This document shows positions 4,842-22,705 of a DNA stretch of 64,000 nucleotides, one piece after another. This DNA is from Macrostomum lignano (taxonomy: Eukaryota), in assembly GCA_002269645.1 (NCBI GenBank), contig NIVC01000736.1:346521-410520 (forward strand). Reading direction: 5' to 3'. The position numbers were made by a program, and so were the translations under genes. The notes beneath the pieces were generated by a model. The model was given only the letters and a program-made list of their open reading frames with translations. It searched no databases and had not been told where the DNA came from. Numbering within the stretch: the first letter of the stretch is position 1; every line of letters begins with the position of its first letter.

Positions 4842-7466
4842 ATGAGTCACGTGACGGCAGCCGGAGGGGTTGGCGGCGCCAGTGCCAGCCAATCAGAAGA
4901 GGCCGTCCTGTCCAGCGTTCGCTCGGCAGTGATTTACGCCGATTCTGGCGCCGCCGATTGGATCAACTGGCGCCGGCTACTGCCGCGCCTAATCGAGCAC
5001 GGCGCGCTGGCTGTGCGCGAATTCCAGCCGGCTGAGAAACTGCAGCAGCAGCCAGCGGCCGCGGCCGTCAGGAAGGCCGTCTTCTTGCTGGCCGGCCGGC
5101 CGGACAGCCGGGTTGCCATGGAGACCCTGGCCGAGCTGGTGTCCGACACCGGACTCAATTATGTGATTCTCCTCACCGGAGCCTGTCCGGAGACCGCCGT
5201 GCTCATGGATGTCGAAGAGCACCTGGCCGGCTGGCTGGGGCACGGGGCCACCGCCCAGGTGAGGCCGCTGAAAACTTATTGAAAGTTTCTTACACTATAG
5301 GCTCGTATACACTATATTATATTTTTATTATGCATCTTGTAAGACATGCCAGTGTCTTTCAGACTACAAAAATATTCGGTGGCCCACGATTTCTAAGAAT
5401 CCGAATCCCACAAACCGTTTGCTCCTCTCAGGTTCGCTTCGTCCCTCTGGGTCACGTGACCCTGATCCGGCCGCCTGAGGACCACCGCTTGCCCGAATTC
5501 GTAGTCCTCGGCGGCGGCGGCGATGACGTCACCGACCCGGATGATGATGACGTCATCAGCGAGCCGATTGGCCACCTGGCTGGCCGGCTGCACAGCCTGC
5601 TGGCCGAGCTGTCGCTCAAGGAGGACATCCTCTGCCTCGGGCCGGCCGCCTCCCGTCTCGGCGACGCCCTGGCAGCCCTCGGGCCCGCAAAGGAGCGGCG
5701 CCGGCTGCCCAACCACCGGCGGGCGACTGTCGTGCTGGTGGATCGCGCGCTGGACCTGGTCGGGCCGCTCAGCTTTCTGGCGGACTCCTGGCTGGACACG
5801 CTGTGCAGATCTGGCCGCCCGCTGCTGGTCAGCGATGTGCACCTGGACCTCACCGCCTTCACCAGGTGCGCCGGCTGGAACTCCAGTGGGACTGAGTTGG
5901 GACTGGGGTGTTGCTGAGTTGGGACTGAGATGTGGCTGAGTTGGAGTTGGGACTGAGATGTGGCTGAGTTGGAATTGGGACTGGGATGTGGCTGAGTTGG
6001 AACTAGGGTGTGGCTGAGTTGGAACTGAGGTGTGGCTGAGTTGGGACTGAGGTGTGGCTGAGTTGGGACTGAGGTGTGGCTGAGTTGGGACTGAGGTGTG
6101 GCTGAGTTGGGACTGAGGTGTGGCTGAGTTGGGACTGAGGTGTGGCTGAGTTGGAGTTGGGACTGAGATGTGGCTGAGTTGGAACTAGGGTGTGGCTGAG
6201 TTGGAACTGAGGTGTGGCTGAGTTGGGACGGAGATGTGGCTGAGTTGGGACTGAGGTGTGGCTGAGTTGGGACTGAGGTGTGACTGAGTTGGGACTGAGG
6301 TGTGGCTGAGTTGGGACTGAGGTGTGACTGAGTTGGGACTGAGGTGTGACTGAGTTGGGACTGAGGTGTGACTGAGTTGGGACTGAGGTTTGGCTGAGTT
6401 GGGACTGGGGTGTGGCTGAATGACCCCTTCCAGCAGCTCAACAGCCAGTTTTCCTCTACCTGCTGCCACTGGCAGATCCCGCAGCGCCGCTCACCTGCCC
6501 ATCGGCTGCCTGTCCGGCTGTCTGGACAGCCCCCTCGGCCGGCGCCTGGCCGGCGGAGACGCCAAGCTGGCCGCAGGGAAGGCGGCCGCCGCGGCAGCCC
6601 AGCGGGCCCTGGCCGACGCCATGACGGCCGAGCGGGTGGCCTTCGACCCGGCGCTGCTCGTCGCCTCAACCTCGGCGGCCGGCAGCCCAGCGGGCAGCCT
6701 CGGCCTCCTGCTGGACCGGCTGGCCTCTGAGCGGCCGGGCCTGGCCTTCTCCAGCCGGCACTCCGGCACCGTCCAGCTGGCCGTGGCGGTGGCGCAGTCC
6801 CTGGCGGCCGCGGCCAGCGAGCGTCGGCAGCTTCAACAGCAGCTGGCAGCCGCCGTCCGCATCGAAAAGTCGATGCTGGGCGCCGCTGGCAGCCCGCCGG
6901 ACGAGCTCGCCGAGGTCCGAGCGGCAGCTGCCGCTGAAGCTCAAGCGGCCGGGCTGCCTGCCGACGCCCTGCTGGCGCTGAAGGTCATTGGTTCGAGCCT
7001 GCTGCCCGCGCCCAAAGCTGATGTTGACGCTGAAAGCGAGGAGACGGCGGCCATCCTCGGCCGGCTGTCCCGCGTCCGGGCCGGCCAGCCTCGCCTGCGG
7101 CTGGTGGACAACTCGGTGGTGCCCACCTACGCGCCTCTCGTTGCTCAGCTGGGCGCCGAGATCGTTGGCGCCGCTGGGGCGCGGGCGCCGGCGCCTCAGT
7201 CGGCACCATCGCTGCAGCTGGAGCACAAGTCCACCGGGATGGCCGGCCTGTTCGGCTACCTGGGGGTGTCCGGCAAGCCGAAGCTGGCCGAGTCCGAGCT
7301 GGTGCTGGTCTGCGTGATCGGCGGCGCCACCTGGGCGGAGCACCGGGCGCTGCGGGAGCGGCTCCGCCAGCTGCAGCCGGGCCGGTCGGTGGCGCTGGTG
7401 ACGGACCGCCTGCTGCGCGGCCGCGACCAGCTGATCGGGGCGCTACGGCGCGGCGAGCTGTGCTAG
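4842..7466 (+). CDS. SCFD2: Sec1 family domain-containing protein 2-like; exons 4842-5258, 5432-5865, ~6476-7466
   Basis: N-terminal AVLSSVRSAVIYADSGAADWINW..VREF..KAVFLL and C-terminal LVLVCVIGGATWAE..PGRSVALVTDRLL match the SCFD2 pattern; RATVVLVDRALDL is a Sec1 motif. Splice phases are 0 and 2. The exon-3 acceptor could be 6476 or 6485. Confidence 0.85.
5888..6418. repeat. 22-bp minisatellite GTGTGGCTGAGTTGGGACTGAG
   Basis: Tandem array filling SCFD2 intron 2. Confidence 0.95.
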
Positions 7467-8008: not shown

Positions 8009-8335
8009 TCCCACAAACTATGAAGATTTTCGCTTGAAATCTGTTTTCATGATTGCCCGCTATTAATCCAGAGTATTCAGTGAAGCTGTGAATTCTGGTC
8101 TTTGAAATGAACTTTCACGCGTATAATAAATAAACTCGTATTTGCCTCTTCATACGAGGTGCGGATTCAATTTCCGATGCAAATTGGCTTTCAATGAAAC
8201 GAACTCAGCTTTTGTCTCGGTTTATTTTATTCAAGTCATATCCTGTACAAAAGGCGGACACGAAACACGCAAAGCACATGAAATGCTTCTCGAGCACCCG
8301 AAAGGCACCCAGGTTAAGTGGCTGAATTTTCACTC

Positions 8336-11300
8336 TCAGAAGCTTCCGGCTGGCCGGAACCGGGCCCGGAACTTGGCCAGCTGCTGCGGCGACATCAGCA
8401 GCCGCATCGCCAGCTGATCGCCGCCGCCTTGGCTGGCGGGCACTGCGGACTCGACAGTCACGCCCTGCTGCTCCAGCCAGGTGTACAGCCGGGAGGCCGG
8501 GGAGCAGCGGAGACGCACGCGCTGGTAGCCCAGGCCGGAGATGAGCCGCGACTGCAGACGCCGCTGCAGCTCAACCAGGTTCAGCCCCGTCTCGCATGAC
8601 ACCAGCAACGAGTCCTCTGGCGGAGCCGGCGGCTGCGGCGACTCAGAGTCAGTCTGGTGGAAAATGGGATTGCGGGAAAGGGGATCACACTGGGGAGATG
8701 GGATCAGACTGGGGAGAGGGGATCACACTGGGGAGATGAGATCAGACTGGGAAGAGGGAATCACACTGGGGAGATGGGATCAGACTGGGAAGAGGGGATC
8801 ACACTGGGGAGATGGGATCAGACTGGGAAGAGGGGATCACACTGGGGAGAGGGGATCAGACTGGGAAGAGGGGATCACACTGGGGAGAGGAGATCACACA
8901 GGGGAGAGGGGATCAGACTGGGGAGAGGGGATCAATCACACTGGGGAGAGGGGATCAGACTGGGGAGGGGGGATCACACTGGGGAGAGGGGATCACACTG
9001 GGGAGAGGGGATCACACTGGGGAGAGGGGATCAGACTGGGGAGAGGAGATCACACAGGGGAGAGGGGATCAGACTGGGGAGAGGGGATCAATCACACTGG
9101 GGAGAGGGGATCAGACTGGGGAGGGGGGATCACACTGGGGAGAGGGGATCAGACTGGGGAGAGGGGATCACACTGGGGAGAGGGGATCAGACTGGGGAGA
9201 GGGGATAACACTGGGGAGAGGGGATCACTCTGGGGAGAGGGGATCACACTGGGGAGAGGGGATCACACTGGGGAAAGGGGATCACACTGGGGAGAGGGGA
9301 TCACACTGGGGAAAGGGGATCACACTGGGGAGAGGGGATCAGACTGGGGAGAGGGAATCACACTGGGGAGGGGATCACACTGGGGAGAGGGAATCACACT
9401 GGGGAGATGGGATCACACTGGGGAGAGGGGATCACACTGGGGAGATGGGAGCAGACTGGGGAGAGGGGATCACACTGCGGGGAGGGGATCACACTGGGCA
9501 GATAGGATAAGACTGGGGAGAGGGGATCATACTGGGGAGAGGGGATCACACTGGGGAGAGGGGATCACACTGGGGAGAGGGGATCAGACTGGGGAGATGG
9601 GATCACACTGGGGAAAGGGGATCACACTGGGGAGATGGGATCAGACTGTGGAGAGGGGATCACACTGGGGAGAGGGGATCACAATGGGGAGATGGGATCA
9701 CACTGGGGAAAGGGGATCACACTGGGGAGATGGGATCACACTGGGGAAAGTGGATCACACTGGGGAGATGGGATCACACTGGGGAGAGGGGATCAGACTG
9801 TGGAGAGGGGATCACACTGGGGAGAGGGGATCACACTGGGGAGATGGGATCACACTGCGGAGATGGGATCACACTGGGCAGATGAGAGCAGACTGGGAAA
9901 AGCCCAGGCTCGCTCACTGAGTCCAGCAGCAGGTCGCACTTGTTGTAAACCGTCAGCATGCCGTTGCGCAGCTTCTCGGACAGTCCGAGTTTGTCCAGCG
10001 TGTCCGAAACTGTCCGGCACCGTTCCGGCCAGTCCGGATCGCTGCAGTCGACCACGTGGAGCAGCTGGTCGGCGTCCAGCGAGTCGCGCAGGGTGCAGCG
10101 GAACGGAGCCACCAGGCTGGTGGGCAGGTCGGACAGGAAGCCGATGGTGTCCACCAGCAGGCAGGGGAGGCCGCACGGCAGGCGGCAACGGTGGTGGCTG
10201 CTGTGCAGGGTGGCGAACAGCCGGTCCTCGGGCAGCAGAGACGACTTGCGGGCCAGCAGCGACACTAAAGAGGTCTTGCCGGCGTTGGTGTAGCCCACCA
10301 CCGCCACAGTGGGCACCTGCGAATACAGATGGGTTGGGTTCAGGAATTTTTTCCTTCCCGGACCCTGCATCCCAACCCCTTTCTCTCACCCTGCATCCTC
10401 AACCCCTCCCCGACCCTGCATCCCCAACCTTTTCTCTCACCCTGCATCCCCAACCCTTTCTCTCACCCTGCATCCCCAACCCTTTCTCTCACCTTGCATC
10501 CCCAACCCTTTCTCTCACCTTGCATCCCCAACCCTTTCTCTCACCTTGCATCCCCAAACCTTCCCCGACCCTGCATCCCCAACCTTTTCTCTCACCCTGC
10601 ATCCCCAACCCTTTCCCTCACCCTGCATCCCAACCCTTTCTCTCACCCTGCATCCCCAAACCTTTCTCTCACCTTGCATCCCCAACCCTTTCTCTCACCT
10701 TGCATCCCCAACCCTTTCTCTCACCCTGCATCCCCAACCCTTTCTCTCACCTTGCATCCCCAACCCCTTCTCACACCCTGCATCCCCAACCCTTTCCCTC
10801 ACCCTGCATCCCCAACCCTTTCCCTCACCCTGCATCCCCAACCCTTTCTCTCACCTTGCATCCCCAACCCCTTCTCACACCCTGCATCCCCAACCCTTTC
10901 CCTCACCCTGCATCCCCAACCCTTTCCCTCACCCTGCATCCCCAACCCTTTCCCTCACCCTGCATCCCCAACCCTTTCCCTCACCCTGCATCCCCAACCC
11001 CTTCCCTCACCCTGCATCCCCAACCCCTTCCCTCACCCTGCATCCCCAACCCCTTCCCTCACCCTGCATCCCCAACCCCTTCTCTCACCCTGCATCTCCA
11101 ACCCTTTCTTTCACCTGTCGCCGCCGCGCCTCCCCCTTCGCGGTCTTCCTGGCCTCGATGTCAGCCAGTGCCGCCCGCAGCCTCTCTGCCTCGGCCTCCA
11201 AGGCGTCGAGGGCCCGCTGCCTGCCGGTGGCCTCAGAGGCGGCCCGGCCGGCGGCCACGGACTCCGGTGAGACGACGGCGGTGCGGGCGAGACGCAGGGG

Positions 11301-12445
11301 GATCTCGGCCAGCTGGATCTGCAGCTTGGACTCGCGCGAGGTCGCCCGGTCGTTGAATGCCTGCAGCACCACCGAGTAGCGGTCCAGCACCGGCCGGCGC
11401 CACTCCGCGGACAGGTTGTACGACTGCGGCGGGAGGGCGCGAGGTTTTTGACTGGTGTGTGAACAATCTAAATGCGTGAACAATCTAAATAAATGTGTGA
11501 ACACTGGGAAATGCGTGAACAATCTAGAGAAGACTGTGAACTATCCAAAGAAATATGTGAATACACAAATTAGTAAACAATCCAGAGAAATGTGTGAACA
11601 ATCCAGAGAAATGTGTGAATTATCTAGAGAAATGTGTGAATATTCCACAGAAATGTGTGAATATTCCACAGAAATGTGTGAATATTCCACAGAAATGTGT
11701 GAATATTCCACAGAAATGTGTGAATAATCAAGAGAAACGTGTGAACAATTTAGAGAAACGTGCGAATAATTTAGCGATATGTGTGAATCATTAAGAGAAA
11801 TGTGTGAATCATTTAGAGAAATGGGTGAATAATCCAGATAAATTTGTGAATAATCAAGAGAAATGTGTGAATAATCAAGAGAAATGTGTGAATAATTTAG
11901 AGAAATGTCTGCACAATTCAGATAAATGTGTGAACAATCCAAAGAAAGTGTTAATAATTTAGAAAAAAATGAATAATTTAAAGAAATGTATGAAAAATCC
12001 ATAGAAATGTGTGAACAATTCATAGAAATGTGTGCACATTCCATAGAAATGTGTGAACAATCCAGAAAAATGTGTGAAGATTCCAGAGAAATGTGTGAAC
12101 AATCCAGAGCCAGCTCACCTGCATGCCGCTCAGCATGGCCACATTGACGAAGACGGCGGTCGCCTCGCTGCGCCGCACCTGGCTGGCGAGCTGGCTGTAC
12201 ACCCCGCTGGTGAACACCCACTGGGTCCGCTGCTTCATGTTGACGCTGAAGCAGCCCGACACCGACCAGCCATCGATGGATTTCACCAGAGCGCGCGCCT
12301 CGGCCAGCTGCCGCTCCGGTGGCACCGAGTCCCGGTGGCCCCGCAGCTTCCGGCGCAGAGGCTGGACGATCAAGACGCTGTGCCAGCGACGCGGCAGCTG
12401 CGGCCGAAGGCGCTGGCAGCGGCGGCAGGACTGAGCTGCGAGAAG
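8336..12445 (-). CDS. GTPBP6: HflX-family GTP-binding protein 6 (mitochondrial ribosome factor); exons ~12445-12119, 11423-11115, 10316-9918, 8653-8336; start codon not found in the first exon
   Basis: QLAEARALVKSIDGWSV, VLDRYSVVLQAF..A..RESKLQIQLAE, G1 VAVVGYTNAGKTSL, LFATL, G3 DTIGF, LLHVVD and G4 VYNKCD. All three introns are GT-AG in phase 0. The 5' boundary is uncertain. Confidence 0.9.
8678..9897. repeat. ~20-21-bp minisatellite; sense (minus) strand TGTGATCCCCTCTCCCCAG
   Basis: Fills GTPBP6 intron 9917-8654. Confidence 0.95.
10360..11112. repeat. ~26-27-bp minisatellite; sense strand GTGAG(A/G)GAA(A/G)GGGTTGGGGATGCAGG
   Basis: Fills GTPBP6 intron 11114-10317 and starts exactly at the splice donor. 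Confidence 0.95.
11455..12105. repeat. Degenerate 21-bp minisatellite AGAGAAATGTGTGAA(C/T)AATCC
   Basis: Fills GTPBP6 intron 12118-11424. Confidence 0.9.
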
Positions 12446-12654
12446 CTGCAGTGCGGTAGGATCAAAAAATCCCCTGAGATCCTGTAGAACGGATTTGCTC
12501 AGAGCCAGCGGTTCTGCTAGATGCAGATCGCAATGGGATTAACTGGACCGCTTTTGGGACAAAACATTTCTTATAGAGAAGAGGCCGGACTCGTGTCAAC
12601 ATCCAATGTCAATATGTACGAGAATGTCTCACGAAGTCTAATGGATTATGGACA

Positions 12655-12998
12655 CTGGATCTAATAGATCAGGGTTCCACTGTCTAAGAGATGAGTCCAT
12701 AGACTAATCCAGAGATTCCAGACTATTAGTCATAGACTAATAGATCAGGGTCCCAGAGTCTTATAGATCAGGGTCCCATAGTCTTATAGATCAGGGTCCC
12801 ATAGTCTTACAGATCAGGGTCCCATAGTCTTATAGATCAGGGTCCCATAGTCTTATAGATCAGGGTCCCATAGACTAATAGATCAGGGTCCCATAGACTA
12901 ATAGATCAGGGTGCCATAGTGTATTAGATCAGGGTGCCATAGTCTAATAGATCAAGGTGCCACAGTCTAATAGATCAAGGTGCCACAGTCTAATAGAT
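12655..12998. repeat. 23-bp minisatellite ATAGATCAGGGTCCCATAGTCT(T/A)
   Basis: Tandem array upstream of GTPBP6. Confidence 0.9.
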
Positions 12999-13380
12999 CA
13001 GGTTACCAAACGGTCTTGGATACAGCAAGCCGAGAAAACAAAGGCAGACACAAGGCAATTTTCAATATTAATAAACCTGTCTAGATGTGCAAATATTAAT
13101 AATTTCCAAGTCACAGAGATGGAAAGCTGGCTGACAAAATAAAACAGTATATTTCTTGTATTCCATTTGCTGATCTGCCGCGTCCCAAATAATAACCAGG
13201 CCAAATGCAGCGCAGGTGAGCATAAGCCTAAAGCATTTCATCATAGATCTACTGGTGCAATAAGATTGATCAAGGCAGCACTGCTGAGCTCTTTGTGATT
13301 GCAAGTTTGGGTGTACAGTATGGCAGCTCAAGTTTGCAAGCAAGTTACGGGTTGGATCAAAAGGCAGAGAACGATTCCTG

Positions 13381-14240
13381 ACGATTCTGATGGTCAGGGA
13401 GTCCCGATTCTGATGGTCAGGTGTCCCGATTCTAATGGTCAGGGTCCTGTTTCTGATGGTCAGGGGTCCCGATTCTGATGGTCAGGGGTACCGATTCTGA
13501 TGGTCAGGTGTCCCGATTCTAATGGTCAGGGGTCCCGATTCTGATGGTCAGGGTCCTGTTTCTGATGGTCAGGGGTCCTGTTTCTGATGGTCAGGGGTCC
13601 TGTTTCTGATGGTCAGGGGTGCTGATTCTGATGGACATGGGTACCGATTCTGATGGTCAGGGGTCCCGATTCTGATGGTCAGGCGCACTTATTCTGATGG
13701 TCAGGGGTACCGATTATAATGGTCAGGCGCACTTATTCTAATGGTCAGGGGTCCCGATTCTGATGGTCAGGGGTACCGATTCTGATGGTCAGGGGTCCTG
13801 GTTCTGATAGTCAGGGGTCCCGATTCTGATGGTCAGGGGTACCGATTCTGATGGTCAGGGGTACCGATTCTGATGGTCAGGGGTACCGATTCTGATGGTC
13901 AGGGGTACCGATTCTGATGGTCAGGGGTACCGATTCTGATGGTCAGGGGTCCCGATTCTGATGGTCAGGGGTACCGATTCTGATGGTCAGGGGTCCCGAT
14001 TCTGATGGTCAGGGGTCCCGATTCTGATGGTCAGGGGTACCGATTGTGATGGTCAGGGGTACCGATTCTGATGGTCAGGGGTCCCGATTTTAATGGTCAG
14101 TGAGTCCTGATTCTAATGGTCAGGCGCACTTATTCTAATGGTCAGGGGTCCCGATTCTAATGTACAGAGGTCCTGTTTCTGATGGTCAGGGGTCCCGATT
14201 CTGATGGTCGGGCGCACTTATTCTGATGGTCAGGGGTCCC
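13381..14240. repeat. ~22-23-bp minisatellite GATTCTGATGGTCAGGGGT(A/C)CC
   Basis: Tandem array between the GABPB-like stop and GTPBP6. Confidence 0.95.
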
Positions 14241-14405
14241 AGTTCTTGTAATATTGTAATCATCCACAGAGGCACCAAAAACCTGATCAGGAGACCCTAA
14301 CAAGAACAATTTTCAACCAAAGCGAGAGTGAATTGAAAAGCTTGAGTCAGAGCTCCAGCACTGAGCCAGTACAAGGGCGGGCGGGGGCAGTCCAGTTAGG
14401 CCCTG

Positions 14406-17400
14406 CTAGGACTCCGAGCAGGACTGCAGGTGCTCCAGCAGCTGGCAGTCGACCCGGAACGCGGACACAACCAGGCGCGAGGCCGATTCCTCGTGAGTGG
14501 CACGCAGGTTCACAACGGAGCCGTCGGTGTCATAAAACCAGCCCAGCAGGGACGACCCGTACATTGCCGTCACGCGCAGGCCCAGGCTGGACAGGTGGGC
14601 GGGCACCTGGAAAATATTGTTTGGGGGAGCTTTGTCACACTGGCGTCACGGCCTTCTTGATGGCGCCCATGCGGTCACAGAGCACTGAGATGAGCACCCA
14701 GCCCGGTCATAGAGCACTGAGAGGAGCACCCAGCCCGGTCACAGAGCACTGAGATGAGCACCCAGCCCGATCACACTGAGATGAGCACCCAGCCCGGTCA
14801 CACTGAGATGAGCACCCAGCCCGGTCACAGAGCTCTGAGATGAGCACCCAGCCCGGTCACAGAGCTCTGAGATGAGCACCCAGCCCGGTCACTCTGAGAT
14901 GAGCACCCAGCCCGGTCACACTGAGATGAGCACCCAGCCCGGTCACAGAGCTCTGAGATGAGCACCCAGCCCGGTCACTCTGAGATGAGCACCCAGCCCG
15001 TCACACTGAGATGAGCACCCAGCCCGGTCACTCTGAGATGAGCACCCAGCCCGGTCACACTAAGATGAACACCCAGCCCGTCACACTGAGATAAGCACCC
15101 AGCCCGGTCACTCTGAGATGAGCACCCAGCCCGTCACACTGAGATGAGCACCCAGCCTGTCACACTGAGATGAGCACCCAGCCCGGTCACTCTGAGATGA
15201 GCACCCAGCCCGTCACACCGAGATGAGCACCCAGCCCGTCACACTGAGATGAGCACCCAGCCGAACCTGGGCGATCCCGCAGCCGGCAGGCAGCCAGACG
15301 GACAGCGGGTCGCCATTCCCCTGATCTGCCAGCTCCTGCAGCCGCATCCGCAGCTCCAGCCCGGACGTGGCAGATGTGGCCGATGAAGCCGCTGAAGCTG
15401 GCGAATCGCTCTCGGCCTGCTGCTGCAGTGAAGACTCAGCCGGCTGCTCGAACTGGATGTCACCAAGGTCGTCCAGCAGCCCCAGACCTGCGTCGGTGGC
15501 GTCGTCAACGCCCGGCCAGCGGCAGGCCTCCGTCAGCGATTCGTCGACGTCGATGCAGCCAGGTTCGACGACGGGCGGGCCCAGAGACCGGCTGCCGTTT
15601 GTGGCGAAGTCGGACAGCAGCGCGGCGCAGCCCAGGCCGGCGTGGCCCAGCGACTCGGCCACCTGCAGGGGCGTCTGGCCGAACTTGTTCACCGGGCTGT
15701 GCTGTGCGCCCGCCCGCAGCAGCAAGTCCACAATGGCCGGCCTGGGGACGCGGGAATGGGGATGGCGGGTGTCACCTCTGACACAATCCTGTCAGACTGT
15801 GAATATCTGACACAATCCTGTCAGACTGTGAATATCTGACACAATCCTGTCAGACTGTGAATATGACACAATCCTGTCAGGCTGTGAATATCTGACACAA
15901 CCCTTTCAGACTGTCAATATCTGACACAATCCTGTCAGACCAATCAGAGAACATCTGACACAAGCCTGTCAGACCAATCAGCGAATATCTGACACAAGCC
16001 TGTCAGACCAATCAGAGAACATCTGACACAAGCCTGTCAGACCAACCAGTGAACATCTGACACAATCCTGTCAGACCAACCAGTGAACATCTGACACAAT
16101 CCTGTCAGACCAATCAGTGAAAATCTAACACAATCCTGTCAGACCAATCAGTGAACATCTGACCAATCAGTGAACATCTGACACAAGCCTGTCAGACCAA
16201 TCAGTGAACATCTGACCAATCAGTGAAAATCTAACACAATCCTGTCAGACCAATCAGTGAACATCTGACCAATCAGTGAACATCTGACACAAGCCTGTCA
16301 GACCAATCTGTGAATATCTGACCAATCAGTGAACATCTGACACAAGCCTGTCAGACCAATCAGTGAATATCTGACACAAGCCTGTCAGACCAATCAGTGA
16401 ATATCTGACACAAGCCTGTCAGACCAATCAGTGAATATCTGACACAAGCCTGTCAGACCAATCAGTGAACATCTGACACAAGCCTGTCAGACCAATCTGT
16501 GAATATCTGACCAATCAGTGAACATCTGACACAAGCCTGTCAGACCAATCTGTGAATATCTGACACAAGCCTGTCAGACCAATCAGTGAATATCTGACAC
16601 AAGCCTGTCAGACCAGTGAACATCTGACACAAGCCTGTCAGACCAATCAGTGAATATCTGACACAAGCCTGTCAGACCAACCAGTGAACATCTGACACAA
16701 GCCTGTCAGACCAATCAGTGAATATCTGACACAAGCCTGTCAGGCCAATCAGTGAACATCTGACACTAGCCTGTCAGACCAATCAGAGAACATCTGACAC
16801 AAGCCTGTCAGATCAATCAGTGAACATCTGACACAAGCCTGTCAGACCAATCTGTGAATATCTGACACAAGCCTGTCAGACCAATCAGTGAACATCTGAC
16901 ACAAGCCTGTCAGACCAATCAGTGAATATCTGACACAAGCCTGTCAGACCAATCAGAGAATATCTGACACAAGCCTGTCAGACCAATCAGAGAACATCTG
17001 ACACAAGCCTGTCAGACCAATCAGAGAATATCTGACACAAGCCTGTCAGACCAACCAGTGAACATCTGACACAATCCTGTCAGACCAATCAGTGAACATC
17101 TGACACAATCCTGTCAGACCATCCAGAGAACATCTGACACAAGCCTGTCAGACCAATCAGTGAACATCTGACACAAGCCTGTCAGACCAATCAGTGAACA
17201 TCTGACCAATCAGTGAACATCTGACACAAGCCTGTCAGACCAATCAGTGAACATCTGACCAATCAGTGAACATCTGACCAATCAGTGAACATCTGACCAA
17301 TCAGTGAACATCTGACACAAGCCTGTCAGACCAATCTGTGAATATCTGACACAAGCCTGTCAGTCATTTCTTAATCCACCTACCAGTTGCCCTGGCAGGC

Positions 17401-18051
17401 GCAGTGCAGCGGCCGGTTGCGCAGGAAGTCCTCGCTGTCCGGATCCGCCCCGGAGTCCAGCAGCAGCCTGGCAACATCGCCGTGCCCGCCCGCCGCGGCC
17501 AGGTGCAGCGGGGTGCGGCCCACTTTATTGCGCGCATCGGCCTGGAAGCTGTGGGCCAGCAGGCGGCGGCAGATGGCCAGGTGGCCGCTCCGGGCGGCCT
17601 GGTGCAAGGCAGTGAAGCCCAGCCAGTCGCTGGAGTGCGGCACGTTGGACTCCAGCAGGCTGCTCACCTGGGCCAGGTCGCCAGCCTCGGCGTAGGCGTT
17701 CAAGCAGCCGCCGAGATTCTTGGCCAGCTCCAGCGGCTTGTCGTCTTCTTCGTCTGGCTGCTGCTTCACCAGAGGAGTCTGCTGCTCCTGCTCAGCCAAT
17801 TGCTGCTTCCGCTGTCTGATGCGCCACCTGCAGCCGCTGCGGCCCTGCATCCGCTGGGAGGCCGCGGCTGCAGAGGCAGCGGCGACAGCCGTGATGGAGG
17901 CGGCAGGGTTGAGCAGTGAGGGATCGGCGGCGAGGGACCCCAGCATTGGACTGCCTGCCTGCTGCTGCTGCTCCTGCGAATATTGCTGCTCCTGCAGAAG
18001 CAACTGCTGCTGGAACAATTTCTGTTGCTGCTGCACTGCTTCTAGTGGCAT
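14406..18051 (-). CDS. GABPB: GA-binding protein beta-like ankyrin-repeat protein; exons 18051-17384, 15741-15267, 14606-14406
   Basis: [67 protein letters not shown] and VNKFGQTPL follow the four GABP-beta ankyrin repeats (DWLGTSPLH, DARTKVDRTPLH, DMLKMTALH, KFCKTAF). The phase-2 intron rejoins TG|G = Trp; the second intron is phase 0. Confidence 0.8.
14675..15262. repeat. ~24-29-bp minisatellite ACACTGAGATGAGCACCCAGCCCGGTC
   Basis: Fills GABPB-like intron 15266-14607. Confidence 0.95.
15777..17362. repeat. 34-bp minisatellite ATCTGACACAAGCCTGTCAGACCAATCAGTGAAC with an internal palindrome
   Basis: Fills GABPB-like intron 17383-15742; TCTGACA and TGTCAGA are reverse complements around a 6-nt loop. 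Confidence 0.95.
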
Positions 18052-20482: not shown

Positions 20483-21180
20483 TTTCCTTTTCCAAAACTG
20501 GCGATCCCAATGACTCGGCTGTTCTCAACGCTTAAAGCTGATGCTGTTGCTCGCATTCTTGGTTCTGCCATTGCAACAAGCTGCAGCTCAAACTCAACCG
20601 ACGCTTCCTCTTGGTCAAGCCCCGCAACTTTACCATCAGTTGTAAAGCGCCTTAAGTTCTTTTTGTGTTCAGACAGACAAGTAGAAAAATACAAAAGCAA
20701 AAGCCAATAACATGTCTAAAACGTTTTCAGCTTTTGCAATAACAAACAATCCTGCTCCCGGTTGGCAAGGCAGTTTCGGTTATGCGGAAACGTCATCGAT
20801 CACCACAAGGATCGAAACTGGGAAACTCGTCGCGACTCATGAGGATGACGGAGCTGGACAGCAGCGTCTGCCTGAAGCCTCGCTGAAGCACGGACGGCGG
20901 CACCTGCTCAGCGGGGCAGCGGCTTCTCTGCACGGACACCAGACCGCATGCGGAGTCGTTCGACTCGACCAGAATGCGGACGGCTCTCAGGTCCGTGAAG
21001 TTTGCTCGGCCTGAGTCGAAGTCGAAGAAGAAGAGCTGCGGACCGGACGGCTGCAGCAGAACCGGGACGGGCTGTCCAAGCGACAGTCGGAAATCCGAAA
21101 CGAGTTGAGCTCTAGAACTAACAGTGACGAGCATAGCCGACTGGGTAGTCACCCACAAATACACCTGCTGCTGCTGCTGC

Positions 21181-21183
<3 letters not shown>
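20483..21183. pseudogene. Rearranged SID-1/SIDT pseudogene: 5' end on + (~20483-20670), ectodomain and TM fragments on - (~20675-21183)
   Basis: The plus piece translates as MTRLFSTLK..AAAQTQPTLPLGQA with frameshifts. The minus piece is QQQQQQVYLWVTT..QPSGPQLFFFDFDSGRANF..GFRQTLLSSSVILM, near-identical to the intact paralogues, followed by frameshifts and an internal deletion. Confidence 0.88.
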
Positions 21184-21268
<85 letters not shown>

Positions 21269-21275
21269 TGTGTGC
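21183..21275. repeat. (TG)n microsatellite
   Basis: Directly visible; lies between the LINE 3' end and the SID-1 CAG tract. Confidence 0.97.
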
Positions 21276-22705
21276 GGTGGATTGCGCCCAGGCACCGCTA
21301 GAGGCGATGCTTGGCCAGTTCTACCAGCCCGAGTGGGTCGGCTGCGATGCTGCTGACATCAATGGAGTGTCCTCCTAGGAAACGGAGCCTGGCACTGGCG
21401 AGGGCCGGGCAGTCGAGCCAGTGAACCAGGTCGTCGCATGGGTGACCGCAGCGTAGGCAGAAGGGATCGACCGACGGGTCGATGACGCTGTGGTAGGCTC
21501 GAAAGAGAAGGCAGTGCCCCGAACGGATGTTGGCGGGGAGCACGGCGTCGGCTGGTTCATTGATGAGGTTCTCCTCGAGGTGACAGTTGAGATGGCTGTA
21601 TGTGAGACTCGAGAGGTCGTGTGGCTGATCGGGGGGTCCTGAATGGCGTGGTGAATGACGTTCTTGGCGCTGCAAAATCTGACTGGGCAGGGAGAGAGGT
21701 CCAGCATCGTGGCCTCCTTGGCGGAGCGGTCAGCCATGCAGTTCGTTGCCGGTGACATTTTAGTGGCCGAGGACCCATTGCCAGGTGATATCGGCGATGG
21801 GCGTTGGCAACTGGGCCCTGATGTTGGGGCTGCCGCTGGCAAGCGATCGGAGGAGGGCCTGGCTATCCATGCAGATATTGGTGGCTCCCGTGGTGGCGGA
21901 TTTGTTAAGTCAGCTGATGGCGAGGGCTGCGGCTTGGACCTCCTCCTCGAAGGATGTGGTGGAGGGAGCGCCTCGCTGCTGGAGCGTGGCCAGAATGGTC
22001 GGGTTGTCCGGGTCGTCGACCGTGACGATGGCCGCGGCACCGCCACCGGCCGTGCCGCCGGCAGCCGAGCCGTCACAGAAGATGGTGATTGTGCCTGGAA
22101 GCAAGCGAATGATGTTGGTGGCAGCTGCCGTGCGCGCTGGGCGAGGCTCCGGCAGATCCATGCTGATGCGCACGTCGTTGAAGCTAAAGGAGGCGTCCCA
22201 CGGGGCGGGGCGCGCAGTGAAAATCGTAGCGCGCGGTGTAGTGTCCGCTTTAATGAGGGGCGTCAGTGCGCGCGCAAATGCCACCAGCTGCTTCTGCGGA
22301 GGCGGTACGGAGTGTTTCCTGTGACCGCGATGTGGCACGGGTGGGAAGCCGGAAGGCGAAGAGCCCTTTCGTAGGCGACGAGACAAATGGCGTTACTTCC
22401 GGTATGGACGGCGGAGCAGATGCCCGCTTCCAGTCTGAGAGCCTCAACAAGAGTCTTGCCGTGTTGGCCGGTAACAATGCTGAGGGCGGCGTTCTGCGCT
22501 CTTTCAAGCTAGTTGAAGGCGGAGTCAGATAGCCAGGGGTGCCAGGCCGGAGCAGCGTAGTTGATGATGCTGAGTTGCATTGCCTTGTAGATGCGAAGCA
22601 AGAGTTTCTTGCTCCACCCCCATTCCTTGGAGGCGAGACAGGCAAGCAGCCGGCAGCGGGAGGTGGACCGTTGAAAACTTCTGTTCAATGAAAGTTGCAT
22701 GTGGC
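21276..22705 (-). mobile_element. 5'-truncated, degenerate non-LTR retrotransposon with RNase H (I/Ingi-group-like)
   Basis: RT thumb WGWSKKLLLRIYKAMQLSIINYAAPAW, RNase H IFCDGSA..SFEEEVQAAALA..WQWVLGH..GNE..ADRSAK, and C-terminal CLRCGHPCDDLVHWLDC zinc knuckle. Contains stops and frameshifts. Confidence 0.85.

What the first reader, a model, noticed from the sequence alone, without database searches (positions are those of the whole stretch)
12119..12540. GTPBP6 has no ATG of its own; a trans-spliced leader AUG would create a clean mitochondrial presequence
Seen: the GTPBP6 frame runs from 12119 to an upstream TAA near 12535 with no ATG. An acceptor, TTTTTTGATCCTACCGCACTGCAG, ends at 12446 exactly in phase 0. 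Established: flatworm spliced-leader exons end in AUG, which can serve as the initiator; GTPBP6 is mitochondrial. Inference: SL-AUG joined at 12445 gives M-LLAAQSCRRCQRLRPQLPRRWHS.., an Arg-rich, acid-free targeting peptide. The start codon and organelle targeting would then depend on trans-splicing. A second in-frame acceptor at 12482 would instead add acidic residues.
Basis: partly seen in the sequence, partly recalled or inferred. Interest (0 to 1): 0.78.

Follow-up and report, generated by a model that had tools for sequence, protein, structure and literature searches.

The report
Flatworm GTPBP6 gene lacking its own ATG
A mitochondrial ribosome-factor gene of the flatworm Macrostomum lignano has no usable start codon in the genome and most likely borrows the AUG at the end of the trans-spliced leader RNA. 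This trick is already known in flatworms, so it is a tidy example rather than a new mechanism.

Summary
The window is Macrostomum lignano assembly Mlig_3_7, contig NIVC01000736.1. The minus-strand gene is a four-exon HflX/GTPBP6 orthologue (BOX15_Mlig025347g2). Its reading frame is closed upstream by TAA at 12541-12539. It has no in-frame ATG before the conserved core, which begins at HSVLIVQP, residue 23. A CTGCAG acceptor ends at 12446 in phase 0.

M. lignano trans-splices about 30% of its genes with one leader that ends in ATG. GenBank annotates all three copies of this gene as 5'-partial. No credible ATG-bearing upstream exon exists. GC3 jumps from about 0.45 to about 0.9 at the acceptor. 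The gene lies downstream of a same-strand ankyrin gene at operon-like spacing. The resulting N-terminus is Arg-rich and acid-free for 39 residues.

So a leader-supplied AUG is the best explanation, at about 0.7. I found no junction reads. The annotated 5' ends sit 9-12 nt downstream of 12446, beside an out-of-frame AG at 12436, so the exact junction is unproven. In-phase AGs are common here (5 of 10).

The mechanism was shown in Schistosoma in 2006. "Targeting depends on trans-splicing" overstates it: the presequence is genome-encoded and only the Met comes from the leader. This is a new member of a known kind, of modest interest.

The parts
12119..12445 (-). Exon 1 of GTPBP6/HflX (109 codons, phase 0 at both ends). 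It encodes an Arg-rich, acid-free leader of about 22 residues and then the HflX N-domain from HSVLIVQP.
   Evidence: Translation. Pfam GTP-bdg_N, E=1.9e-9. GC3 0.90. Alignment to 11 orthologues places the conserved core at residues 23-30.
12446..12469 (-). Proposed trans-splice acceptor TTTTTTGATCCTACCGCACTGCAG. It has a T-tract, a TTGAT branch-point-like element (A at 12462) and CTGCAG ending at 12446. It is the first AG downstream of that element.
   Evidence: Sequence. Fits the M. lignano trans-acceptor motif [T/C]TNCAG (PMC8629364). Identical in all four genomic copies apart from a T/C change in the T-tract of L001. The UniRef model P0126 starts exactly at LLAAQSC.
12431..12436 (-). Two further AGs just inside exon 1. 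CGCAG ends at 12436, where the SL AUG would be out of frame and give MLSPAAAASAFGRSCRVAGTAS*. CTCAG ends at 12431 in phase 0 and would give M-SCRRCQRL.... The GenBank CDS starts abut these sites.
   Evidence: AG and phase list. (the CDS starts of L001 and L003 fall on the G of CGCAG; L002, which is the window, starts at 12433).
12539..12541 (-). In-frame TAA that closes the reading frame upstream. No ATG lies between it and the acceptor in this copy.
12482..12484 (-). Not conserved.
   Evidence: Reads CGG in L001 and L003. It would place two Asp residues in the first 8 residues.
11115..11423 (-). Exon 2 (103 codons), covering the end of the N-domain and the middle coiled region.
   Evidence: Splice sites cag|TCG and CAG|gtgaaa, GC3 0.92. 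Pfam GTP-bdg_M is weak.
9918..10316 (-). Exon 3 (133 codons), the HflX-type G domain with GYTNAGKT.
   Evidence: Pfam MMR_HSR1, E=9e-12. Invariant G-motif columns in A2.
8335..8653 (-). Exon 4, the C-terminal domain and TGA stop (8337-8335). AATAAA signals at 8231 and 8226.
12447..14405 (-). Outron or intergenic spacer between the stop of the same-strand ankyrin gene and the acceptor. It is 1,959 bp, of which 1,131 bp are two minisatellites (12731-13002 and 13382-14240).
   Evidence: The repeat-adjusted length of about 830 bp is below the 1-kb operon threshold of PMC8629364.
13077..13244 (-). Rejected.
   Evidence: GC 0.39 and GC3 0.43, with donor GTTTAT, which is not GTRAG. It is not part of any annotated model.
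14406..14608 (-). Last coding exon and TAG stop (14408-14406) of the upstream ankyrin-repeat gene on the same strand.
   Evidence: Gene list of L002.

Best explanation
The locus is one of three near-identical, functional copies of the Macrostomum lignano GTPBP6/HflX gene. GTPBP6 is a mitochondrial ribosome biogenesis and recycling GTPase. The genomic first exon begins at a splice acceptor and carries no initiator codon.

Proposed mechanism. The pre-mRNA comes either from a promoter in the spacer or, more likely, as the downstream member of an ankyrin-gene/GTPBP6 polycistron. It is trans-spliced to the 35-nt spliced leader ...TTGCATG at CTGCAG|CTT (12446|12445). The leader's terminal AUG then lies in frame and serves as the initiator. 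This gives a 451-aa protein, M-LLAAQSCRRCQRLRPQLPRRW-HSVLIVQP.... Its first 22 or so residues are encoded by the genome apart from the Met and act as a short mitochondrial presequence.

Shown: the organism, gene identity, exon structure, absence of a genomic initiator, absence of a credible upstream coding exon, the acceptor motif, the compositional switch, and purifying selection.

Inferred: that the mRNA is trans-spliced at all, that the junction is at 12446 rather than 12436 or 12431, that the SL AUG is used, and that the N-terminus directs import.
For: (1) Organism and leader. The window matches M. lignano NIVC01000736.1 at 100%. The SL is CGGTCTCTTACTGCGAAGACTCAATTTATTGCATG, 30% of genes are trans-spliced, and the acceptor motif is [T/C]TNCAG (PMC8629364). 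CTGCAG fits that motif.

(2) Gene identity. Pfam finds GTP-bdg_N and MMR_HSR1. The named best hits are 'putative GTP-binding protein 6'. Human GTPBP6 is mitochondrial (PMC7736812).

(3) No genomic start. TAA lies at 12541-12539. The first in-frame ATG is codon 71, inside the conserved N-domain.

(4) Annotation. GenBank lists all three copies (PAA77537.1, PAA85641.1, PAA85521.1) as 'partial'. Each starts within 12 nt of the acceptor and has no upstream exon. The UniRef model P0126 starts exactly at LLAAQSC, although the frame stays open 31 codons further upstream.

(5) Composition. GC3 is 0.86-0.92 in the four exons, 0.45 in the open frame just upstream of 12446, and 0.43 in the alternative exon.

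(6) Upstream exons. Of 36 ATG-to-GT candidates in any phase between 14405 and 12447, none has a GTRAG donor.

(7) Function. Paralogues differ at 5-6 synonymous against 1-3 non-synonymous codons in 345 codons, a rough dN/dS of 0.07-0.16. The gene is therefore functional and must be translated from upstream of residue 23.

(8) Operon-like setting. A same-strand ankyrin gene ends 1,959 bp upstream, about 830 bp after removing tandem repeats. This is below the 1-kb operon criterion (PMC8629364).

(9) N-terminus. It is acid-free for 39 residues, has 6 Arg in the first 30, net charge +6, and an 18-residue hydrophobic moment of 0.58. The medians for 110 Met-starting orthologues are 29, 3, +4 and 0.43.

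(10) Precedent. The S. mansoni SL AUG is in frame in 28% of trans-spliced mRNAs and is required by more than 40 cDNAs (Cheng 2006, as summarised in PMC9851317). The Macrostomum SL ATG has been flagged as a start codon (PMC10468722).
Against: - There is no direct junction evidence. Exact look-ups of seven hypothetical full-length products and an N-terminal homology search found no transcript-derived ORF.
- The GenBank CDS starts fall on the G of CGCAG (12436 equivalent) in two copies and 2 nt after it in the window copy. This is what trans-splicing at 12436|12435 would give. There the SL AUG is out of frame and opens a 22-codon dead-end ORF.
- That argument is weakened because 5' ends in this annotation are ragged. 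The neighbouring ankyrin gene is called 'partial' starting 6 nt downstream of its genomic ATG in L003 and 24 nt downstream in L002. Copies with identical sequence also get different starts.
- Phase-0 AGs are common here, 5 of 10.
- Arg-rich, acid-poor peptides also arise in the other frames of this GC-rich stretch, so presequence-likeness is only modest evidence.
- The SL AUG has a weak Kozak context, with T at -3.
- The presequence would be unusually short. Orthologues have roughly 50-150 residues before the conserved core.
Confidence: 0.7

Rival explanations
1. The gene is trans-spliced, but mainly at the AG 10 nt downstream (CGCAG|CTCAG, 12436|12435). The SL AUG is then out of frame and most mRNAs are unproductive. 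Alternatively, they are translated by leaky scanning or non-AUG initiation. The in-frame sites at 12446 or 12431 would be minor, or would serve as a regulatory switch.
For: The annotated CDS starts of all three copies abut this AG: on the G in L001 and L003, and +2 in L002, which is the window. The SL's terminal G matches the acceptor G, which would explain a start on that G. A neighbouring zf-C2H2 gene model starts exactly after an AG, so some 5' ends in this annotation are precise.
Against: TCGCAG does not fit [T/C]TNCAG, whereas CTGCAG does (PMC8629364). 12446 is the first AG after the T-tract and the TTGAT element, and by established splice-site scanning the proximal AG is normally chosen. 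An out-of-frame SL AUG would leave a conserved gene under purifying selection with no initiator before Met71. Identical sequences receive different annotated starts, and the ankyrin gene shows truncation of 6-24 nt, so the annotation cannot resolve 10 nt. P0126 and P0001 begin at the 12446 boundary.
Confidence: 0.15
2. The mRNA is not trans-spliced. It has an unannotated 5' exon or 5' extension. Translation then starts at a cis-encoded ATG such as exon 13244-13077, at a near-cognate codon in the open frame upstream of 12446, or at internal Met71.
For: The frame stays open for 31 codons upstream of 12446 and contains CTG codons. Paralogue L001 has acquired an in-frame ATG there. The exon 13244-13077 is phase-compatible. 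Annotated 5' ends can be truncated.
Against: GC3 is 0.45 in the upstream extension and 0.43 in the alternative exon, against about 0.9 in real exons. No ATG-bearing candidate has a GTRAG donor. The upstream ATG exists in only one of four copies. Met71 would delete the first strand and helix of the conserved N-domain and any targeting signal. None of the three StringTie/TACO-based models joins an upstream exon.
Confidence: 0.1
3. The copy is a decaying duplicate in a recently polyploid genome, and its lack of a start codon reflects loss of function.
For: M. lignano is a hidden polyploid with many duplicated genes (PMC10468722). The C-termini of the copies differ: PAGSF* against PAGQAEASESENSAT*, and a truncated model in L003.
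Against: All four exons are intact with canonical splice sites and GC3 of about 0.9. Synonymous changes outnumber non-synonymous ones between copies. All copies share the same ATG-less 5' end, so this is the ancestral state of the gene in this species and not a lesion of one copy. No other HflX-type gene from M. lignano appeared in the search.
Confidence: 0.05

Closest known systems
SL-AUG-initiated ORFs of flatworms (Cheng, Cohen, Ndegwa & Davis 2006, J Biol Chem 281:733; called 'slORFs' in PMC9851317)
   Same: The spliced leader ends in AUG. The recipient exon starts at an acceptor with an open frame in phase and has no genomic initiator of its own. The protein therefore depends on trans-splicing for its Met.
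   Different: That work was experimental and done in Schistosoma mansoni. Here the species is the free-living M. lignano, the case rests on sequence and annotation only, and competing AGs at +10 and +15 nt leave the junction unresolved.
Alternative trans-splicing controlling mitochondrial targeting in Trypanosoma brucei (isoleucyl-tRNA synthetase, PMC3273800)
   Same: The position of SL addition decides whether an N-terminal mitochondrial presequence is translated.
   Different: In trypanosomes the SL carries no initiator. The long mRNA simply includes a genomic upstream AUG, and two isoforms (mitochondrial and cytosolic) result. Here only one productive product is expected, and the SL itself supplies the AUG.
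Human GTPBP6 / bacterial HflX (PMC7736812, PMC8209004)
   Same: Same domain order: HflX N-domain, helical linker, HflX-type G domain, C-terminal domain. Identity to metazoan GTPBP6 is 32-37% over about 95% of the length.
   Different: The extension before the conserved core is only about 22 residues, against roughly 50-150 in other animals. The initiator is not in the genome.
M. lignano operons resolved by SL trans-splicing (PMC8629364)
   Same: A same-strand upstream gene, a repeat-adjusted spacer below 1 kb, and a [T/C]TNCAG acceptor at the 5' end of the downstream gene.
   Different: The raw spacer is about 2 kb and repeat-filled. The poly(A) site of the upstream gene was not located, and there is no AATAAA in the spacer. 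Co-transcription is not shown.

Membership tests
HflX / GTPBP6 GTPase family | HflX N-terminal domain (Pfam PF13167, GTP-bdg_N) | tested here: met
   E=1.9e-9, 38.4 bits against a cut-off of 25.4, profile positions 2-88 of 89.
HflX / GTPBP6 GTPase family | HflX-type G domain with P-loop G-x-x-N-A-G-K-T/S | tested here: met
   MMR_HSR1, E=9e-12. VVGYTNAGKT is invariant across 12 aligned orthologues.
HflX / GTPBP6 GTPase family | Middle helical domain (PF16360, GTP-bdg_M) | tested here: inconclusive
   18.5 bits, below the 29.5 gathering score. The region aligns with orthologues but is divergent.
HflX / GTPBP6 GTPase family | Closest named relatives are metazoan GTPBP6 | tested here: met
   Hits from E=1e-60 named 'putative GTP-binding protein 6' in molluscs, echinoderms, insects and mammals.
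HflX / GTPBP6 GTPase family | Mitochondrial localisation | not testable with these tools
   Only simple presequence measures could be computed. Localisation is known for the human protein (PMC7736812).
Flatworm SL-AUG-initiated ORF | The host has an SL RNA whose exon ends in AUG | tested here: met
   The window is M. lignano. The SL ends ...TTGCATG (PMC8629364). No SL RNA gene lies in the window itself.
Flatworm SL-AUG-initiated ORF | The mRNA carries the SL, joined at a mapped acceptor | not testable with these tools
   No reads or cDNAs were reachable. The indirect evidence is 5'-partial models that start at the acceptor cluster.
Flatworm SL-AUG-initiated ORF | The SL AUG is in frame with the main ORF with no intervening stop | tested here: inconclusive
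   In frame for junctions at 12446 and 12431, out of frame for 12436. Which one is used is unknown.
Flatworm SL-AUG-initiated ORF | No genomic AUG able to give the full conserved protein | tested here: met
   TAA at 12541-12539 and first in-frame ATG at codon 71, inside the N-domain. No spliceable ATG exon upstream.
Mitochondrial matrix-targeting presequence | N-terminal, Arg-rich, free of acidic residues, able to form an amphipathic helix | tested here: met
   Acid-free for 39 residues, 6 Arg in the first 30, net +6, muH(18) 0.58. All are at or above the upper quartile of 110 orthologue N-termini, except the acid-free stretch, which lies above the median but within the interquartile range.
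Mitochondrial matrix-targeting presequence | Positive call by a trained predictor, and an MPP cleavage motif | not tested
   No predictor such as TargetP or MitoFates was available. RRW|HS resembles an R-2/R-3 site by eye only.
M. lignano operon (downstream gene) | Same-strand neighbour with repeat-adjusted intergenic distance below 1 kb, and a trans-spliced downstream gene | tested here: inconclusive
   The distance criterion is met: 1,959 bp minus 1,131 bp of repeats gives about 830 bp. Trans-splicing and co-transcription are not shown.

The most novel reading that the evidence does not exclude
All M. lignano GTPBP6 copies have lost a genomic initiator, so an essential mitoribosome factor depends entirely on the spliced leader. 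Three AGs within 15 nt (12446 in frame, 12436 out of frame, 12431 in frame) would then act as a productive/non-productive switch that tunes mitochondrial translation capacity through the choice of trans-splice site.
Probability: 0.1. Interest if true: 0.5.

Novelty: new member of a known kind. Interest (0 to 1): 0.3.

Why it matters
If confirmed, this is a clean case in a free-living model flatworm of a conserved, essential organellar gene whose start codon is supplied only by the spliced leader.

The practical value is for annotation. GenBank lists all three copies as 5'-partial, and many other 'partial' M. lignano models probably have the same cause. Adding the SL ATG at mapped trans-splice sites would complete them.

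It also shows that once an AUG-terminated leader exists, genes can lose their own initiator and become locked into trans-splicing. It does not reveal a new mechanism. Use of the SL AUG has been known in flatworms since 2006, and mitochondrial targeting dependent on the trans-splice site is known from trypanosomes.

Tried and rejected
- Looked for transcript-derived proteins carrying the SL Met. A first N-terminal homology search returned only old frameshifted UniRef models. A third search with the exon-1 peptide plus SL-encoded residues found nothing new. Exact look-ups of seven hypothetical full-length products were all absent.
- Contig look-ups for the UniRef models P0001 and P0002 found nothing.
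- Searched supplements and full text for Mlig025347, Mlig016050 and GTPBP6 in M. lignano papers. No hits.
- Searched the window for an SL RNA gene. None found.
- Considered that the N-terminal frame rests on a homopolymer error, because the old ML2 models read GCGGGC where the window has GCGGGGC. Rejected: all three Mlig_3_7 copies agree with the window, and GC3 is 0.83 in the window's frame against 0.57 in the ML2 frame.
Rejected on donor quality and composition.
- Considered the 12482 acceptor. Rejected as the main site because the AG is absent in two paralogues and it adds two Asp residues.
- Tried to use the GenBank CDS starts to fix the junction. Abandoned because the annotated 5' ends are demonstrably ragged.
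Full report
**What is there**

The finding lies on the minus strand. Translating 12541-12119 gives a stop (TAA, 12541-12539), then 31 open codons, then LLAAQSCRRCQRLRPQLPRRWHSVLIVQP.... The sequence TTTTTTGATCCTACCGCACTGCAG ends with its G at 12446, so an exon starting at 12445 is in phase 0. The exon ends at 12119 before GTGAGC.

I extended the model to four exons: 12445-12119, 11423-11115, 10316-9918 and 8653-8335. All have canonical splice sites, all are in phase 0, and the model ends in TGA followed by AATAAA. Pfam finds the HflX N-domain and an HflX-type G domain. The best named relatives are metazoan 'putative GTP-binding protein 6'. Human GTPBP6 is a mitochondrial ribosome biogenesis and recycling factor (PMC7736812).

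**Whose genome**

The top protein hit is BOX15_Mlig025347g1 of Macrostomum lignano. Its cluster holds two more GenBank copies. The locus of one of them, PAA77537.1 (Mlig025347g2) on NIVC01000736.1, is 100% identical to window 20433-336 over 20,098 bp. The window is therefore M. lignano assembly Mlig_3_7.

This species uses a single 35-nt spliced leader, CGGTCTCTTACTGCGAAGACTCAATTTATTGCATG, on about 30% of its genes. The enriched motif at trans-splice acceptors is [T/C]TNCAG (PMC8629364).

**Is the gene really without a start?**

- In this copy there is no ATG between the TAA and the acceptor.
- The first in-frame ATG is codon 71. An alignment with 11 orthologues shows the conserved core starting at residues 22-30 (WHSVLIVQP against GHxVxVxQP). 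Met71 would therefore remove conserved structure.
- All three GenBank models are flagged 'partial'. They begin AQSC..., QSCRRC... and AQSC..., with no upstream exon.
- GC3 is 0.86-0.92 in the four exons. In 8-codon windows the switch falls at 12445-12433.
- Of 36 ATG-to-GT exons in any phase between the upstream gene's stop and the acceptor, none has the GT[A/G]AG donor typical of the species.
- The copies differ by 5-6 synonymous against 1-3 non-synonymous codons over 345 codons. The gene is under purifying selection and is not a dead duplicate.

I also checked a worry raised by older UniRef models, which read the N-terminus in another frame with one G fewer. The three Mlig_3_7 copies agree with the window, and GC3 favours the window's frame, 0.83 against 0.57.

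**Context**

An ankyrin-repeat gene on the same strand ends at TAG 14408-14406, which is 1,959 bp upstream. Of that spacer, 1,131 bp are two minisatellites, leaving about 830 bp. This is below the repeat-adjusted 1-kb limit used to call M. lignano operons (PMC8629364). A downstream operon gene must be trans-spliced, so the setting fits. I could not place the ankyrin gene's poly(A) site, because the spacer contains no AATAAA.

**The N-terminus**

With the leader's AUG joined at 12445 the protein starts MLLAAQSCRRCQRLRPQLPRRW|HSVLIVQP.

| Measure | This protein | Median of 110 Met-starting orthologues |
|---|---|---|
| Acid-free stretch (residues) | 39 | 29 |
| Arg in first 30 | 6 | 3 |
| Net charge | +6 | +4 |
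| 18-residue hydrophobic moment | 0.58 | 0.43 |

(All.) The N-terminus is presequence-like but short. Orthologues have roughly 50-150 residues before the core. The other frames of this GC-rich stretch are also acid-poor, so this is supporting evidence, not decisive. No trained predictor was available.

**What weakens the exact claim**

1. Five of the ten AGs between 12541 and 12380 are in phase 0, because CAG is a favoured codon. 'Exactly in phase' is therefore close to a coin flip.
2. There are three AGs within 15 nt: 12446 (phase 0), 12436 (out of phase) and 12431 (phase 0).
3. The GenBank CDS starts fall on the G of the 12436 AG in two copies and 2 nt after it in the window copy. Trans-splicing at 12436 would give exactly this. 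The leader AUG would then open a 22-codon dead-end frame (MLSPAAAASAFGRSCRVAGTAS*).

I do not think this overturns the model, for these reasons:
- Copies with identical sequence receive different starts.
- The neighbouring ankyrin gene is called 'partial' from 6 nt (L003) or 24 nt (L002) downstream of a perfectly good genomic ATG.
- The pipeline combines StringTie/TACO ends with coverage 'peaks' (PMC5730564).
- CTGCAG fits the published acceptor motif and TCGCAG does not.
- 12446 is the first AG after the T-tract and the TTGAT element.
- The UniRef model P0126 starts exactly at LLAAQSC, although the frame is open further upstream.

Even so, the junction is inferred and not observed. Every attempt to reach transcript-level evidence failed.

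**The second acceptor**

CTACAG ends at 12482 and is in phase. It would add MDLRGFFDPTALQ, with two Asp residues. It reads CGG in two of the three other copies, so it is not a conserved site.

One copy, L001, has gained an in-frame genomic ATG 19 codons upstream of the acceptor through a C-to-A change. This is a curiosity of that copy only.

**Comparison with what is known**

Use of the flatworm leader's terminal AUG as initiator was shown in Schistosoma mansoni. It is in frame in 28% of trans-spliced mRNAs and is needed by more than 40 cDNAs (Cheng et al. 2006, as summarised in PMC9851317; see also PMC12582326). The authors of the Macrostomum genome papers already treat the leader's ATG as a possible start codon (PMC10468722). 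Mitochondrial targeting that depends on the trans-splice site is known from trypanosomes (PMC3273800), although there the leader brings no AUG.

The present case works like the Schistosoma examples. For membership, the host leader, the absence of a genomic initiator and the in-frame geometry are met. The defining step, an SL junction on this mRNA, could not be tested.

The presequence is genomic, and without the leader there is no protein at all.

**Verdict**

- Observation: confirmed.
- Interpretation: partly supported.
- Leader-supplied initiator: about 0.7.
- Exact junction at 12446: about 0.55.
- Novelty: a new member of a known kind.
- Use: mainly for repairing '5' partial' annotations in M. 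lignano.
- Interest: 0.3.

Noticed in passing
window 8674-9897, 10362-11115, 11470-12109, 12731-13002, 13382-14240, 14683-15262: Every intron of the GTPBP6 gene, the spacer upstream of it and an intron of the ankyrin gene carries its own long minisatellite. Periods are 19-27 nt, with 12-64 copies at 79-93% identity. These arrays make up most of the non-coding DNA at this locus, and their copy number differs between the paralogous loci.
   Followed up: partly
L001 7935-7937 (equivalent to window 12505-12503): Paralogue Mlig025347g1 has a C-to-A change that turns CTG into an in-frame ATG 19 codons upstream of the acceptor (MSKSVLRDLRGFFDPTALQ-LLAAQ...). The window copy and L003 lack it, and GenBank still annotates that copy as partial.
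   Followed up: partly
window 18027-18051 (minus strand); L002 2407; L003 872: The upstream ankyrin-repeat gene has a genomic ATG at 18051 ([13 protein letters not shown]...). Its GenBank CDS is nonetheless 5'-partial, starting 24 nt downstream of that ATG in L002 and 6 nt downstream in L003. The annotated 5' ends in Mlig_3_7 are therefore ragged.
   Followed up: yes
L001 20353 (minus strand of the locus): The neighbouring zf-C2H2 gene model is also 5'-partial and begins right after CTCTGCAG| (LSMPYPDEQI...). The SL AUG would be in frame there too, 2 codons before a genomic ATG. This is a second possible SL-AUG case on the same contig family.
   Followed up: no
window 8335-8370; L001 12774-12813; L003 11799-11865: The C-termini of the three GTPBP6 copies differ. 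The window has ...RPAGSF*. L001 has ...RPAGQAEASESENSAT*. The L003 model is truncated after exon 3 (…LLLDSRTRCWCHARRG*), probably because of indels or a different annotated splice.
   Followed up: no
window about 21100-22650: A (GT)n microsatellite and overlapping long ORFs on both strands. Their translation resembles the reverse-transcriptase-like tail of a fused UniRef model (P0125). This is probably a retroelement fragment.
   Followed up: no
window 4842-7466 (plus strand): A Sec1-like gene (613 aa in GenBank) converges on the 3' end of GTPBP6. Its annotated CDS starts with a normal genomic ATG.
   Followed up: no
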